Source of the DNA: Mizuhopecten yessoensis
Taxonomy: Eukaryota
Assembly: GCF_002113885.1 (NCBI RefSeq)
Contig: NW_018406081.1
Coordinates: forward strand, 12,247-76,246
DNA length: 64,000 nucleotides
Reading direction: 5' to 3'
Shown: in pieces, positions 14,223 to 54,384 of the stretch
Layout of the letters: each line of letters opens with the position of its first letter
Numbering within the stretch: position 1 is the first letter of the stretch
Notes under the pieces: model-generated
What the model was told of the DNA's origin: nothing
The model's database searches: none
Seen by the model: only the letters and a program-made list of their open reading frames with translations
Translations under genes and position numbers: made by a program

Positions 14223-14535
14223 CTACTTCATGAGCACTATTTCGACATTTTCTTCCGGTTGGTAAGTATCGATTATGAAAAGTTCTTTTTCATACAACCA
14301 ATACATTTTTTTTTGCATTGTACATACGCTTACAGCGTAACCAAAATCGACATCGATTTTGTGGACAACTCGTACACATGTTACACCTTTGTGTGCATAC
14401 GCTTCACTGGTCATTTGTCTGATGAAGGTGACAGTGTAGATATCGTACTAGTCATCGAAACGTCACATAGAAAATTGTATTGGTGGAGTAAAAAAATTCC
14501 TGAGCACTGTATATGGTAACACTGAAGCCGTCCAT
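14223..14535 (-). pseudogene. Decayed ~104-codon ORF antisense to the hammerhead, unknown product
   Basis: ATG at 14535. Removing one base from the A7 run at 14490-14496 joins it to ORF 14223-14414, giving MDGFSVTIYSAQEFFTPPIQFSM*RFDD*YDIYTVTFIRQMTSEAYAHKGVTCVRVVHKIDVDFGYAVSVCTMQKKMYWLYEKELFIIDTYQPEENVEIVLMK. TATATAAG lies upstream at 14608-14601. Confidence 0.35.
14414..14470 (+). ncRNA. Minimal type I hammerhead ribozyme (Penelope-like-element type)
   Basis: Core CTGATGA at 14419-14425, an extra A, stem II GGTGAC/GTCATC (14427-14432 and 14451-14456), GAAA at 14457-14460, then C-GTC (palindromic ACGT minimal stem III, predicted cleavage after 14464). Stem I (TGT/ACA) is short. Confidence 0.7.
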
Positions 14536-16530
14536 TCACATTAAGAACGAGGTGCATCAGCAGTGAATTCGGATCGACCACTCGTATCCGATACCTTGTA
14601 CTTATATAAATAGCGTTAACAATCGTCGTTACCGACGATTACCGATTTGTGATTATCAAAACGGTCAAGCTGAGAGCAATGTGATGAAGCACACCCGTGG
14701 AATGGCTACTAAGCGGCAGGAAACAGTGTTTAGGAATTATTCGTGCCTGAGGGACGCTCTGTCTACAGTTAGTGAAAATAATGGAGTTTCTGCTTGGAGA
14801 TCTTGCTAGTGCGTTTTGCAGTCGTAATAAAACCTGCAGAAACGGTGATAAAGTCAATATGCAAATAATACTGTAATGAGTTCTGATTTCGTGAATGTGA
14901 ACAACAATAAGGTAGTGTGAGATTTACGGTCTCGTTATGGTTATGTCAGTTCTGTTCCTCCACAAGCAAAACATAACAACACAATTCTTTATAAAATAAA
15001 TTCTTCGTTTTACAACGAAAATGCTAAACTTGCCAAAATTAGCCTATTTGTAGTACAAATCTCTAGCCTTTTCATAGGTAGTAAGTGTCATGAAGAATGG
15101 AATAATGAACGGATTATATATCCATTGAAAGCACAGATGTGAGAATCTAAAATGTTATTGAAAACTAAAACAAGAAAGTAATGAAGATTTTCTGTTGATA
15201 AAGTCATTAAATAATGAATTGATGACATTGTCGCTCCTATTCTTATCATTTTGTAATAGTTTGTTTTGTATCTTCATTAAGATTCATCAGTTTGCAACAT
15301 TTGATATCAAAATACTACTTCTTACACAAACAATGTACGTATTAAACGTGTCGCAACGGTTCAACACTGGTCCTACCTAATCACAGCTTGACAACGGGAC
15401 TAGTCGGTCTTGGAACGTTGCGACACGAACGTTGTTTGTGTTTTAAGTAAAACTTTGATAGACTTGTTTGTTTGAGTTTTGCTTCTCCACAACTGCTAAG
15501 GTCATATGAAGACGGATGCCCGGGGAGGCGCAATCGTGAGAAAAGATAACGTAAGAGAGAAAAGAAAAGACAGAACCAATGGAGCAGTAGGTCAATTTTG
15601 CTATCATCAAACTCCTCTTGGTAGATACACCGAAACAAACCCCTGATTCCGCAGAAACCCCCACATTAGTCAACTCGTCCGATATGAAGTGGGATAAAGG
15701 CAGGGCCCCTGATTCCCCTGAATCTGCACTTCGAAAAATGAAGGGGTCTAGTCTCAGTTCACACTATCAGAAATGCGTGTGTCTACACTTCGCATCCTTA
15801 CACGCCTGGCGTCTGAAGGACATAACTAGATTGCAAAATAAAATTGCTTGAGGGATGACGTTTCAAACGTGTATCACCTCTAGCTGCACTTGACGTATTT
15901 GGCACATGACGTAGACATCCCTTCCTACATATCCTCTTCAGACGATAGGTCAAAAGAACCAGTAGTACGTGCGTTGTCGTAGGATGTCACGAGCGACGAC
16001 ATGCCTAGCGTTGGCCTGCTGTAGCGTGATGCGACGTTGCTGTCTTAAAATAATGAGATGCAATATTGTCCCTATAGCGCACAAAGGTCAAGTTCCCATC
16101 AATAATCGCAAGAGTGGATCTTCTGTTAGCAGTTATTTCTCCCCGTACCTAAAATAACTTTCCCAATCCAGAGGAGCGGGGTTGGATTACACAAGAGACA
16201 TGTGGTATTTCTCCAGTACGGCAGTAGACCTTCACACGACCGTCAATGCTACCAAGATTATATCTTTATTTGTATGTAAACAGTACACTTGACAATTGCA
16301 CATGTTTGCACCGTAAGTACCGGTTACACACTTCTAATCTAAAAAGGTCGTATTGCTGGGAACTGCGACCGGTTACTGTGCTTACTCAAACGATTTTGCA
16401 CGGGCCTTACTGATTTGTCTGAACGGAACTATTGCGAGCAGTCAAAATTGACGTTTGGAAATGTGGTCGTCAAGTCTTGACATAACACGCGACAAGCCGG
16501 ATCTTGATCAGTCTCGGGTAGGAATCGAAT

Positions 16531-22434: not shown

Positions 22435-22895
22435 AAATCTTAGTAGGACTAAACTACTGTTGAAGTATCAGAGGAGGTGCATAAAAACCCTATGAATTTC
22501 AAAAATTTAAAGTAGTCCTGAGTAATTTATTATAGTTACGGCAAACCTCGGGTACTAAACACACACCATCAGAGTCTACCACCTTGTATCTTGAAAGGTG
22601 AAGGTATTACACACACAGGTGGTTGCACCTTCAAAATCTATTTATAGAAACAGTTTGCAAAAAAATGTAATTCTCTGCATCATACAGCTGTTTCGTCTTT
22701 CTTGGACTCCTCGTTGATGCTACGTGCCAAAAAGTTGGAAATCCGAATAGGTATAAAGTACTGTTGAAACAGAAGGAGGTATGCATAAAACACCTTAATT
22801 TATTAGTTTAAAAAATTACGAGCACTTAGTTAGTTTTCAATTAATAAACCGTGTATATTATGAACAATTCCACTTCTATTTAAAGGTTGGCAATA
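22435..22895 (-). mobile_element. Retrozyme-like tandem element (~1.4 units) with a decayed minimal hammerhead at 22677-22720
   Basis: Minus strand: GCATCA-ACGAGGA-GTCC AAGAA AGAC-GAAAC-AGCT-GTA-TGATGC. Stem I is a perfect 6 bp and stem III is the palindrome ACAGCTGT. The direct repeat TACTGTTGAA..GGAGGT..GCATAAAA occurs at 22455 and 22759 (period 304). The element is homologous to 29889-30280. Confidence 0.75.
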
Positions 22896-25299: not shown

Positions 25300-28162
25300 T
25301 GGCACCACCAACAATAAAGTGTTTGTCTATGTGAAAAAGATGGTGATTATAAAATCACAAGCGTGTGAAGGGTATAAGCATAAAAGAGTTTGGTACAAAA
25401 AAATAATTAAATACATATTTTTATTAGATGGTCATTTTTGTGAATGCTTGTTTTTCCTAATGCCTAATCTTACGAAAGCTTATTTTATGAAAGATTTTTG
25501 GGGCATACATATTGTTGCGAGGTGTTTTTTGTGGTGCTTAATTTTTGTAATGCTTAGTTTCTATGTCTCTTTACTTTTTTTTTAAATGCCATTGTCAGCG
25601 AATTATTTTGTTTTTACTGTTTACATTACATTGTAACCTGGCATATTGGCATTAAACTGTACCCCTCACCAATTGTATACAAATACGTATTAACAATAGA
25701 TCTGATGATAATAAAAAAAAGTTATTTTATGAAAAACAATCCTTACATGACAAATGCAGACAGAGGTACTTCGGCAGACGCCGCCAATTCCTATTAAACG
25801 ACTTCAGTAAAGAAACGGAATGTTTGCGTTCTACTGGTTGAGTGTATTTTACGACTATTGATAAAAACGGATTCGGCTAATTGTGTAGCAGACACGAAAT
25901 GTCTGAAACAGAATTGCATTATTTTAACTGAGGTTGGTACACATTTGTACTTCTCAATTTGTTTCGTTGATTTAAAGCTGACGCGTGTGTTTAGCAACAT
26001 CACACAGCCCGTCTGATCAAGTATGAAGCTTCTTGAAGTTAGGAGAATAGCTATGCGTGCTAAGTGGTGTTTAAAATACCTACGGACGTAAACTAGCTGT
26101 TCTATATTGTCGACCAGTCGATGGAAAATGCCATAATTAGATAGCGAAATTCATATTGTATGCCCATTGTTTACTCTTAAGTATCTGTGGTAATATATTA
26201 ATGTTTGAAAAAACTTCAATTTACATCTGTTTTCGATGTTATCTCTTTCGTTAGTCATAACAACGTTTATATTGCTGTTTAATCGATTTCAGTACCTTTT
26301 GTTTTATTTGAATAGCAACTCATAAACCCGAGTTTTCTCTGTCCTGGGTTTACAAAACCCATCCTACATTCGCCCTGAAATTACATATAGTACATTGGTG
26401 TGCGTTCTATCGTATTAAGCCACTTTATGATACGTGAGTGATGGAGTGTACATTTATAACTCCAAAACACTAAATGTTAAAATCAGTTGACTATGTGTCA
26501 GCTGGGCCATGAATTTCTAGTGATTAACAGGTAAAAAAACCCACCAATCAATAATATTGTTAATTAAATTGTTAAAAGATTCAAGTAACAGCACCAGGAG
26601 TCAACTAGTGAATGGCATCCAAAAGATCCGCGGTGCCAACATTTGTAACAGTGCGTTGGAAACGTTTTTACATGCATAACAATAACGTTGATAAATCAAC
26701 ACTGAAAACGGAACTTTGAAAAAAAATATAAACGCAGCGCTGTGAGCCAGTATTTGGACCCTTGACCTCAGATCACAATGTAGTTGCTCTTACTAAGTGA
26801 GGTACTTGATTACGTTAGTTTCCTACACTGCCCGACCACAGCTGGTTTGTACATCCAAAACCAAATTAAGGGGAGGTCACTGTATGTATGAAGACTATCA
26901 TTGGAATTATTATAGTTTTTCTCCTGTAGTGGGACATGGATTCTTAAACTATTGAAAAGTTGAACAATTGCAACCAAAGTTCGAATGTTTTATTTCAGAA
27001 AAGTGTCGTAACTATCAAACATTCTTGATGTTTGTTCTTGATATATCTACCAACTGAAAACAAATGCCATTAGACTATGAATACACTACGAATATAACGA
27101 TTCTCGTGCAACCAGTCAGCTGATTTCAAACACAATGACCACTTCATATTATTACGCATAATACCGTTTCTGAGAATAATTATCTCCCCTTCTCCGATAT
27201 AACGTAGTTGAGAGAAATTATAATAAACATTAAAAAAATCATGAATGATGCACCATTGTACTATTATTATTATTCTTTCTAATTTAAAACTAAAAAGATA
27301 CTTATAACATTGTCATAACAAATACTGACTTCCGACTCACAATAGGTTCCTCTAGGTCACGAACTTTTTAACACCCTGTTTCGAAAAGTCCGGCTGTGTA
27401 ATCCCTTGCACATTAAACTCAGAGAACTTTGTAATGACACAGACACTTCATCCAGCAACTTATCATCATTTACATTTCTTTTGGTAAGCAGTGTATGCCT
27501 ATTGCCGACGGGAGCTTGAAATAGTGCTAACTACAAAAAGTGTTGTAACTTTTTTATTGTAGTTCATCGTAACGTAAATATATGAATTGAATTGTTTTCA
27601 TGTACATTGCGGCAATGAAAAGCAGTACCTGATCTACATTTCTTCCACAGGATATGTAGATCATATACTGCTATTCATTGCCTCTATGTACTGTACTTTA
27701 AACAAATTCTATTCAATCCCGATATTTATGCACATATTAAAGAAAGGAAATTAATTTGAAAGTTTTACTCGTACATCAAAATGTTGAAATGGATTCAAGG
27801 CATTGACCGGTAATCCATATGTTGTAAGCCTTTCTATTAAACACAAGCGTACTTAACGATGTACCAAAACACATGTTTATCTCTGGTACATAAAGTTTAT
27901 TACTGTTTTTCATGTGTACATCTGTTATCACAGCATGTAATACACGTGCATCTGTCACTACGGAGTGCATGCATGCATAATGCGACTTTCAACATTGTTA
28001 TTTGATATACTAGCCACATGTATTGGGTGTAAAATACGAAATCCTTTGAATGCTTACTACATGTAGCAAAGAAATCTGATCAATAAGGAGAAGTATTGAT
28101 CATTATATACCTACAGTGAATACGGCACCTACGTAATACATACGACAAAACTATTGTTTATG

Positions 28163-52562: not shown

Positions 52563-52863
52563 NNNNNNNNNNNNNNNNNNNNNNNNNNNNNNNNNNNNNN
52601 NNNNNNNNNNNNNNNNNNNNNNNNNNNNNNNNNNNNNNNNNNNNNNNNNNNNNNNNNNNNNNNNNNNNNNNNNNNNNNNNNNNNNNNNNNNNNNNNNNNN
52701 NNNNNNNNNNNNNNNNNNNNNNNNNNNNNNNNNNNNNNNNNNNNNNNNNNNNNNNNNNNNNNNNNNNNNNNNNNNNNNNNNNNNNNNNNNNNNNNNNNNN
52801 NNNNNNNNNNNNNNNNNNNNNNNNNNNNNNNNNNNNNNNNNNNNNNNNNNNNNNNNNNNNNNN
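52563..52863. other. Assembly gap (301 N)
   Basis: Run of N. Confidence 1.
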
Positions 52864-54056: not shown

Positions 54057-54384
54057 NNNNNNNNNNNNNNNNNNNNNNNNNNNNNNNNNNNNNNNNNNNN
54101 NNNNNNNNNNNNNNNNNNNNNNNNNNNNNNNNNNNNNNNNNNNNNNNNNNNNNNNNNNNNNNNNNNNNNNNNNNNNNNNNNNNNNNNNNNNNNNNNNNNN
54201 NNNNNNNNNNNNNNNNNNNNNNNNNNNNNNNNNNNNNNNNNNNNNNNNNNNNNNNNNNNNNNNNNNNNNNNNNNNNNNNNNNNNNNNNNNNNNNNNNNNN
54301 NNNNNNNNNNNNNNNNNNNNNNNNNNNNNNNNNNNNNNNNNNNNNNNNNNNNNNNNNNNNNNNNNNNNNNNNNNNNNNNNNNNN
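54057..54384. other. Assembly gap (328 N)
   Basis: Run of N. Confidence 1.

What the first reader, a model, noticed from the sequence alone, without database searches (positions are those of the whole stretch)
14223..14640. Hammerhead ribozyme with a small gene-like unit written on the opposite strand
Seen: the plus strand carries all core hammerhead nucleotides (CTGATGA, 6-bp stem II, GAAA, minimal palindromic stem III, GTC site). On the minus strand, a perfect 8-bp hairpin (AATCGTCG-TTAC-CGACGATT, 14621-14640), a TATA box (14608-14601) and an ATG (14535) precede a ~104-codon frame that runs through the ribozyme. That frame needs one homopolymer indel and has two stops. One stop (TGA, 14465-14463) overlaps the cleavage site and could be CpG decay of CGA. 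Established: such minimal hammerheads mark pseudo-LTRs of Penelope-like elements and can work as dimers. Inference: this ~400-bp cassette may be a solo Penelope-type terminal repeat that encodes an uncharacterised antisense microprotein, so one sequence is constrained both as ribozyme and as codons. I recall, without verification, similar W-L-Y-x-x-E-L-F-x-I-D-T motifs in hypothetical proteins of other marine invertebrates.
Basis: partly seen in the sequence, partly recalled or inferred. Interest (0 to 1): 0.78.

Follow-up and report, generated by a model that had tools for sequence, protein, structure and literature searches.

The report
Penelope retroelement fragment with minimal hammerhead
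This is a dead 259-base fragment of a Penelope-like retrotransposon from a scallop genome that carries the known "minimal" hammerhead ribozyme motif of such elements; the proposed antisense small gene is not real.

Summary
The hammerhead-like motif at 14416-14467 (+) is real and more than chance. It fits every hallmark of the "min-HHR" described for metazoan Penelope-like elements (PLEs) in 2014. Those hallmarks are the CUGAUGA and GAAA boxes, a bulged base before G10.1-C11.1, a 6-bp helix II, a 3-bp helix I, no helix III and a palindromic ACGU.

Longer copies of the same repeat carry reverse-transcriptase and GIY-YIG remnants upstream of the motif on the same strand. Other PLE hallmarks are also present: 5' truncation, inverted arms and an optional 36-nt tail.

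The motif arms form an island of conservation across divergent PLE families of this genome and in another scallop, Ylistrum balloti. There is no double compensatory covariation, and Rfam models do not detect the motif.

The window copy is a 259-bp insertion (14239-14497) flanked by a target-site duplication. It holds a single ribozyme copy, so it is probably inert.

The antisense "gene" fails:
- Its ATG, TATA box and hairpin lie in single-copy host DNA outside the insertion.
- The frame has three stops and needs a frameshift.
- The family keeps the stops.
- The peptide motif is just the sense reading of the PLE tail.

This is a known kind of element and of low interest.

The parts
14228..14238 (.). 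Left copy of the target-site duplication (TCATGAGCACT; the last 8 bp match the right copy perfectly)
   Evidence: Read directly from the sequence. It matches 14498-14508 at 10 of 11 positions.
14240..14310 (-). PLE 3'-terminal piece whose sense strand is the minus strand. It includes the optional 36-nt tail and the canonical terminus at 14240.
   Evidence: It matches the tails of other copies at 82-91% identity. The family terminus ...GAAGAAAATGTTTAGAAA is sharply defined in 28 ends. Tail readings are listed.
14317..14497 (+). PLE 3'-UTR piece 'B', sense on the plus strand and so inverted relative to the tail piece. It lacks the last ~50 nt of the element.
   Evidence: It is 93-95% identical to dozens of copies, with over 2500 first-look candidates. 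In longer copies it lies downstream of the GIY-YIG ORF. Another locus, L049, has the same inverted arrangement.
14416..14467 (+). Minimal type-I hammerhead motif. Helix I is 14416-18 with 14465-67. The CUGAUGA core is 14419-25 and the bulged A is 14426. Helix II is 14427-32 with 14451-56, and loop 2 is 14433-50. GAAA is 14457-60, C15.2/G16.2 are 14461-62, U16.1 is 14463 and C17 is 14464. The predicted cleavage site is between 14464 and 14465.
   Evidence: Descriptor hit, with 0 hits in 300 shuffles. There are 731 anchored copies in the genome against 0 for the reversed control. The motif arms are conserved across divergent families and in Ylistrum. The features match PMC4209133.
14498..14508 (.). 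Right copy of the target-site duplication (TCCTGAGCACT)
   Evidence: From 14503 onward the DNA is single-copy in the genome.

Best explanation
Window 14239-14497 is a short, dead insertion of a canonical (C-terminal endonuclease) Penelope-like retrotransposon of a pectinid scallop genome.

It consists of the last ~70 nt of the element, including the optional 36-nt tail (sense on the minus strand). This is joined to an inverted ~180-nt piece of the 3' untranslated / pseudo-LTR region (sense on the plus strand). The whole is flanked by an 8-11-bp target-site duplication. That is the usual product of PLE target-primed reverse transcription with an inverted 5'-truncated copy.

The inverted piece carries the family's minimal hammerhead motif (min-HHR). 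In active elements this motif lies about 350 nt downstream of the RT-GIY-YIG ORF on the sense strand. By analogy with published PLE hammerheads it is thought to self-cleave precursor RNA only as a dimer or with protein help.

At this locus there is one copy only and no coding capacity, so the motif is most likely inert.

Shown here: the identity of the repeat, its anatomy, and the conservation of the motif. Inferred: catalytic activity and its role.
For: Repeat family:
- Over 2500 first-look candidates.
- Longer copies of 1.2-2.1 kb with inverted arms.
- Internal ORF remnants hit RVT_1 (E 1e-5 and 2e-6) and GIY-YIG (E 1e-3, 0.017, 0.29) in the order RT then EN.
- The RT ORF has 2136 homologues. 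Several of them carry RVT_1 plus GIY-YIG. The best named hits are Ylistrum balloti (80%) and Mizuhopecten yessoensis (83%).
- The min-HHR is on the ORF strand downstream of GIY-YIG. In L024 the ORF is 1260-1892 and the HHR is 2244-2289, with a second inverted copy at 1004-959.

PLE hallmarks described in PMC8557442 and PMC11167929:
- 5' truncation and inverted 5' copies.
- A 30-40-bp optional tail. Here the arms end at position 302 or 338.

Motif:
- All four emergent min-HHR features of PMC4209133 are present.
- There are 0 hits in 300 shuffles.
- Conservation: 35 of 40 columns are invariant in the motif arms, against 8/18 in loop 2, 21/150 upstream and 20/60 downstream. This holds across divergent families and Ylistrum.
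- The only changes are at the free position N7 and two pair-preserving one-sided changes.

Against: - No Rfam hammerhead model reports the motif, even at E <= 10 on 701 nt.
- There is no double compensatory covariation, so the structure is supported by conservation pattern only.
- Helix I is only 3 bp.
- The predicted minimum-free-energy fold of the monomer pairs core UGAUG with CGUCA at the cleavage site. That fold is -15.0 kcal/mol, against -7.8 for the hammerhead fold.
- The Pfam hits on decayed ORF pieces are just under the curated cut-offs.
- Published min-HHRs cleave poorly in vitro (PMC4209133), and cleavage was dispensable for insertion in vitro (PMC11167929).
- No cleavage data exist for this family.
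Confidence: 0.88

Rival explanations
1. The conserved block is a PLE cis-element that works by sequence, for example as a recognition site for the element's RT/endonuclease near the reverse-transcription start. On this reading its hammerhead likeness is vestigial or non-catalytic.
For: - The stems are conserved at the nucleotide level, with no compensatory double changes.
- In L067 the whole 3'-terminal ~130 nt (motif plus tail) is conserved while the upstream UTR is unrelated.
- The minimum-free-energy fold is not the hammerhead fold.
- The literature reports low activity, and hammerhead-independent insertion in vitro.
Against: - Loop 2 and N7 vary while all catalytic positions are invariant. 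That is the pattern expected of a ribozyme.
- The bulge, the G10.1-C11.1 pair and the palindromic 15.2/16.2 match a motif class with documented, if weak, cleavage.
- The two roles are not mutually exclusive.
Confidence: 0.2
2. The hammerhead-like motif is a chance resemblance inside an ordinary repeat.
For: There is no Rfam hit. Helices I and III are weak. The 179-nt piece is uniformly conserved among young copies.
Against: - 0 hits in 300 shuffles.
- It sits where PLE hammerheads are known to sit, on the sense strand after GIY-YIG.
- It forms an island of conservation across divergent families and another genus.
Confidence: 0.05
3. The stretch encodes an antisense microprotein that overlaps the ribozyme.
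For: Only the co-occurrence of an ATG, a TATA-like octamer and a hairpin upstream, plus a 63-aa ORF at 14223-14414 on the minus strand.
Against: - The ATG, TATA box and hairpin lie in single-copy flank outside the target-site duplication.
- There are 3 stops in the straight frame.
- Every minus frame of the family majority keeps at least 2 stops.
- The frame crosses a locus-specific junction.
- The peptide motif is the sense reading of the PLE tail. In most copies that reading is closed by a stop 15 codons before the terminus, and the tail is not conserved in Ylistrum.
- There are no Pfam hits.
Confidence: 0.02
4. The repeat is a MITE or other DNA transposon with long terminal inverted repeats (my own first reading).
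For: Inverted arms of 250-330 bp flank many copies, and 12 of 28 termini are followed by TA.
Against: - The internal sequence encodes RT and GIY-YIG, not a transposase.
- Copies are 5'-truncated with one sharp 3' end.
- Target-site duplications are long and variable: 8-11 bp here and 14 bp in L008.
- Inverted 5' copies are a documented PLE feature.
Confidence: 0.03

Closest known systems
min-HHR of metazoan Penelope-like elements (Cervera & de la Pena 2014, PMC4209133)
   Same: - Type-I topology with the CUGANGA and GAAA boxes.
- An unpaired base between A9 and G10.1, and a G10.1-C11.1 pair.
- A 6-bp helix II, a short helix I, no helix III or loop 3, and a palindromic 15.2/16.2.
- Located in the pLTR / 3' region of an RT-GIY-YIG element.
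- Many solo copies, and pairs on opposite strands a few hundred bases apart.
   Different: Loop 2 is long (18 nt) and can extend helix II. Helix I is only 3 bp. The motif shows very little variation within this genome, more like the D. virilis case than the highly variable Schistosoma families. Activity is untested.
Canonical metazoan type-I hammerhead (Rfam RF00163), such as the compact 44-nt copies of this same genome
   Same: The same catalytic core and topology, and a dimer-prone palindromic helix III region.
   Different: The genome's canonical copies have a 6-bp helix I, a 4-bp helix II with a 4-5-nt loop, and a 2-bp helix III with an AGCU loop. They score 22-35 bits. The motif here is not reported by the model at all.
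Poseidon PLE of Anolis carolinensis (PAc; PMC11167929)
   Same: A PLE with a hammerhead in the pLTR, and an optional tail that corresponds to internal reverse-transcription start sites. The ribozyme is protein-assisted and dispensable for insertion in vitro.
   Different: In PAc the ORF start overlaps the hammerhead. Here the motif lies downstream of the ORF, with stops in all frames between them.

Membership tests
PLE min-HHR (PMC4209133) | Catalytic boxes CUGANGA ... GAAA ... U16.1 H17 in type-I order | tested here: met
   The boxes are invariant in 6 divergent representatives except at the free N7 position.
PLE min-HHR (PMC4209133) | An unpaired nucleotide between A9 and G10.1, and a G10.1-C11.1 pair | tested here: met
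   A14426 is the unpaired base, and G14427 pairs with C14456.
PLE min-HHR (PMC4209133) | A large helix II (6-8 bp) and a short helix I (2-5 bp) | tested here: met
   Helix II is 6 bp and helix I is 3 bp. 100% of cells are paired in 6 sequences.
PLE min-HHR (PMC4209133) | No helix III or loop 3, and palindromic 15.2/16.2 that allows a dimeric helix III | tested here: met
   The sequence reads GAA-ACGU-C.
PLE min-HHR (PMC4209133) | Lies in the terminal repeat / 3' region of an RT-GIY-YIG element, on the sense strand | tested here: met
   Seen in L024, L032 and L035, and in Ylistrum L078 downstream of the RT ORF.
PLE min-HHR (PMC4209133) | Compensatory covariation among consensus families | tested here: not met
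   There are only two one-sided pair-preserving changes and no double changes. A more distant PLE (L081) has a different candidate motif with other stems, but with a non-standard helix III.
PLE min-HHR (PMC4209133) | Self-cleavage as a dimer or with protein | not testable with these tools
   The predicted monomer fold disfavours the active form. The window holds only one copy.
Rfam Hammerhead_1 (RF00163) | Reaches the gathering score of 34 bits | tested here: not met
   There is no hit at gathering, or at E <= 10 on 701 nt.
Penelope-like element, canonical EN+ type | An RT followed by a C-terminal GIY-YIG endonuclease in one ORF | tested here: met
   RVT_1 is followed by GIY-YIG on one strand of L035, with GIY-YIG also in L024 and L032. 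These hits are below the Pfam cut-offs in the decayed pieces. Homologues carry RVT_1 plus GIY-YIG.
Penelope-like element, canonical EN+ type | Frequent 5' truncation, inverted 5' copies, an optional 30-40-bp tail and variable target-site duplications | tested here: met
   compared with the descriptions in PMC8557442 and PMC11167929.
Protein-coding small gene on the minus strand | A continuous ORF with its own start, kept open in related copies | tested here: not met

The most novel reading that the evidence does not exclude
The hammerhead-plus-tail block (~130 nt) may be a portable 3' module shared, nucleotide for nucleotide, by PLE lineages whose RTs are only ~50-58% identical over the matched stretch (decayed copies read through stops) and whose remaining 3' UTRs are unrelated (L067). 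That would imply either exchange of 3' ends between PLE families by template switching, or a dual constraint in which the same bases serve as both the ribozyme and the RT/endonuclease recognition site.
Probability: 0.2. Interest if true: 0.4.

Novelty: new member of a known kind. Interest (0 to 1): 0.15.

Why it matters
It adds one more PLE family, in scallops, to the long list of elements that carry minimal hammerheads. It also gives a clean worked example of how a truncated, inverted PLE insertion can look like a small gene. The conservation island supports the view that the motif is under selection in active elements. It does not answer the open question of what PLE hammerheads do. The novel claim, an antisense microprotein sharing bases with a ribozyme, does not hold.

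Tried and rejected
1. MITE / TIR-transposon reading. I held this through and dropped it when the internal ORFs hit RVT_1 and GIY-YIG.
2. Rfam scans of the window, the local 701 nt and four long copies found no hammerhead at this motif. The only Hammerhead_1 hit in the window is a different, compact motif at 22677-22720.
3. Is the 179-nt piece plus tail the C-terminal part of the PLE ORF? A plus frame is open in 29 of 45 copies and ends 3 nt before the terminus. Against that:
   - There are stops in all frames just upstream.
   - A stop lies 15 codons from the end in most copies.
   - There is no Pfam hit.
   - The Ylistrum alignment has non-triplet indels.
   I rejected this reading.
4. A PDB sequence search of the RT ORF gave nothing useful.
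5. Covariation test: none found.
6. More distant PLE homologues gave no descriptor hit and no Rfam hammerhead. These were Amphiura L080, Branchiostoma L084, and L079, L082 and L083. L081 gave a non-standard candidate only.
I used only a majority string of the 179-nt non-coding piece, to count stops.

Full report
**Observation.** The plus strand at 14416-14467 reads as follows:
- helix I, 5' strand: UGU
- core: CUGAUGA (14419-25)
- one extra A
- helix II: GGUGAC paired with GUCAUC, 6 bp with one G-U pair, closing an 18-nt loop
- GAAA (14457-60)
- C, G, U, then C17
- helix I, 3' strand: ACA

The minus-strand hairpin (14621-40), the TATATAAG octamer (14608-01) and the ATG (14535) are also present as described. 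No Rfam family reaches its gathering score anywhere in the window. No hammerhead model reports the motif even at E <= 10 when only 701 nt are searched.

**What the stretch is.**
- *High-copy repeat.* A search of the window's own genome with 14223-14640 showed that 14317-14495 is a high-copy repeat. There were over 2500 first-look candidates, and the best copies are 93-95% identical. It also showed that 14245-14310 matches the same family in the opposite orientation.
- *First reading, now dropped.* I first read this as a MITE with long inverted repeats.
- *Longer copies.* These run to 1.2-2.1 kb and carry ORF remnants. The remnants hit RVT_1 (E 1.2e-5 and 2e-6) and, downstream on the same strand, GIY-YIG (E 9.5e-4, 0.017, 0.29).
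- *Homologues of the RT ORF.* A 308-aa RT ORF has 2136 homologues in marine invertebrates. Several of them carry RVT_1 plus GIY-YIG. The best named hits are Ylistrum balloti (80%) and Mizuhopecten yessoensis (83% over half the query).

An RT followed by a GIY-YIG endonuclease defines a canonical Penelope-like element (PLE). The host is evidently a pectinid scallop, with a 988-Mb assembly.

The family also shows the published structural hallmarks of PLEs (PMC8557442; PMC11167929):
- strong 5' truncation with one sharp 3' terminus;
- an inverted 5'-truncated copy next to many insertions;
- an optional 36-nt tail, seen as arms ending at position 302 or 338 of my reference arm;
- long, variable target-site duplications, for example 14 bp in L008, which inserted into a 55-bp satellite.

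**The motif.** Cervera and de la Pena (PMC4209133) defined a "min-HHR" in the terminal repeats of metazoan PLEs. It has no helix III, a larger helix II, a shorter helix I, an unpaired base between A9 and G10.1, a conserved G10.1-C11.1 pair and palindromic 15.2/16.2. The motif here has every one of these features.
- *Chance expectation.* My re-implementation of such a descriptor finds exactly one hit in the 64-kb window on both strands. It finds none in 300 dinucleotide-preserving shuffles.
- *Copy number.* An anchored pattern (helix I plus the two boxes, helix II left free) occurs 731 times in the genome. It occurs 0 times when read backwards.
- *Position in longer copies.* The motif lies on the ORF strand downstream of GIY-YIG. 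In L024 the ORF piece is 1260-1892 and the motif is 2244-2289. A second copy often sits on the opposite strand in the inverted arm, as the 2014 paper also describes.

**Is the motif constrained?** Among young copies the whole 179-nt piece is uniformly conserved, so they carry no signal. Three divergent PLE families of this genome carry the same motif. Their RT pieces (L060, L063, L067) are 49-58% identical to the query. The PLE of Ylistrum balloti (L078) carries it too.

In a four-way alignment of one family copy (L010), L060, L067 and Ylistrum L078, the invariant columns are as follows:

| Region | Invariant columns |
|---|---|
| Motif arms | 35 of 40 |
| Loop 2 | 8 of 18 |
| 150 columns upstream | 21 of 150 |
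| 60 columns downstream | 20 of 60 |

In six representative motifs (window, L002, L060, L063, L067, L078), the only changes outside loop 2 are at N7, the one free core position, plus two one-sided, pair-preserving changes (G-U to G-C in helix II, G-C to G-U in helix I). All 54 pair cells are standard pairs, and there is no double compensatory change. The structure is therefore supported by a conservation island and by fit to a specific descriptor, not by covariation.

Thermodynamics does not favour the active fold of a monomer. The minimum-free-energy structure pairs UGAUG of the core with CGUCA at the cleavage site, at -15.0 kcal/mol. The hammerhead-like fold is at -7.8 kcal/mol. This agrees with the published finding that single min-HHRs do not cleave and that dimers cleave weakly. 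It also agrees with the finding that a PLE hammerhead can be protein-assisted and dispensable for insertion in vitro.

**Anatomy of the window copy.**
- *Extent and flanks.* The insertion spans 14239-14497. It is flanked by TCATGAGCACT (14228-38) and TCCTGAGCACT (14498-508), which match at 10 of 11 positions with the last 8 perfect.
- *Tail piece.* 14240-14310 is the element's last ~70 nt, including the tail and the canonical terminus. Its sense strand is the minus strand.
- *Inverted piece.* 14317-14497 is the upstream 3'-UTR piece in the opposite orientation, and it does not reach the element's end. The locus is therefore a very short direct 3' end with an inverted 5' piece. Locus L049 has the same arrangement and L008 a similar one.
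- *Solo status.* No other piece of the family and no second min-HHR lies in the window, so a dimer cannot form in cis.

**The antisense gene.**
- *Unique flank.* 14503-14900 is single-copy in the genome. The ATG, the TATA-like octamer and the hairpin therefore belong to host flank beyond the target-site duplication, not to the repeat.
- *Chance level.* The hairpin is one of five perfect 8-bp / 4-nt-loop hairpins in the window. TATA-like octamers occur 77 times.
- *Broken frame.* The straight frame from ATG 14535 has three stops in 104 codons, and reaching the WLYEKELF segment needs a frameshift.
- *Stops kept by the family.* The family majority of the 179-nt piece keeps at least 2 stops in every minus frame, the same ones as the window copy. 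43 of 45 copies have at least one stop in every minus frame.
- *The TGA is ancestral.* The TGA over the cleavage site is the complement of U16.1-C17-A1.1. It is invariant in all families and in Ylistrum, so it is ancestral rather than decayed CGA.
- *Origin of the peptide motif.* It is the sense-strand reading of the PLE tail, which lies inverted here. In most copies that reading is closed by a stop 15 codons before the terminus. The tail is not conserved in Ylistrum.

**Comparison and novelty.** This is a member of a known kind. It is a PLE min-HHR in a truncated terminal fragment, as described in 2014 for trematodes, cnidarians, arthropods, fishes and amphibians. I found no paper that names this scallop family, so I file it as a new member rather than as something already catalogued.

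The one mildly unusual point concerns L067. Its motif-plus-tail block is shared almost base for base with this family, while the rest of its 3' UTR is unrelated. That could mean module exchange or a sequence-level second function.

The N runs at 52563-52863 and 54057-54384 were left alone. Nothing looked human.

Noticed in passing
window 22677-22720 (-): A sub-threshold Hammerhead_1 match (22.3 bits, E 0.11) of the compact canonical type. It lies inside the stretch that other first-reader notes call retrozyme-like (s1-510928). It is a different motif class from the one studied here.
   Followed up: partly
window 27593-27690, both strands: A near-perfect ~80-nt hairpin that matches several miRNA-precursor models on both strands at 27-30 bits, far below their cut-offs. 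It looks like a palindromic repeat rather than a known miRNA.
   Followed up: no
L011-L018 (other contigs of the genome): The genome holds compact 44-nt type-I hammerheads with a 6-bp helix I, a 4-bp helix II and a 2-bp helix III capped by palindromic AGCU. One of them reaches the Rfam cut-off at 35.5 bits, and the first look found about 100,000 rough candidates.
   Followed up: partly
L008:1345-1692: A PLE fragment inserted into a 55-bp tandem satellite, with a ~14-bp target-site duplication. It has the same layout of inverted tail plus truncated direct arm as the window copy.
   Followed up: partly
L081:1915-1948: In a metagenome-derived contig with an RVT_1 plus GIY-YIG ORF, a different min-HHR-like motif starts 5 nt after the ORF stop. 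It has a bulge, a 6-bp helix II and a 5-bp helix I, but a non-palindromic 3-nt insert at helix III.
   Followed up: no
window 14259-14519 (+) and family copies: A plus-strand frame is open through the 179-nt piece in 29 of 45 copies. In copies with a six-A run it continues to a TAG 3 nt before the element's terminus. It has no Pfam hit and is broken by non-triplet indels in Ylistrum, so I read it as chance.
   Followed up: yes
window 14342-14361: A perfect 8-bp hairpin (CAAAATCG-ACAT-CGATTTTG) lies inside the PLE 3'-UTR piece, and the family largely keeps it. Its function is unknown.
   Followed up: no
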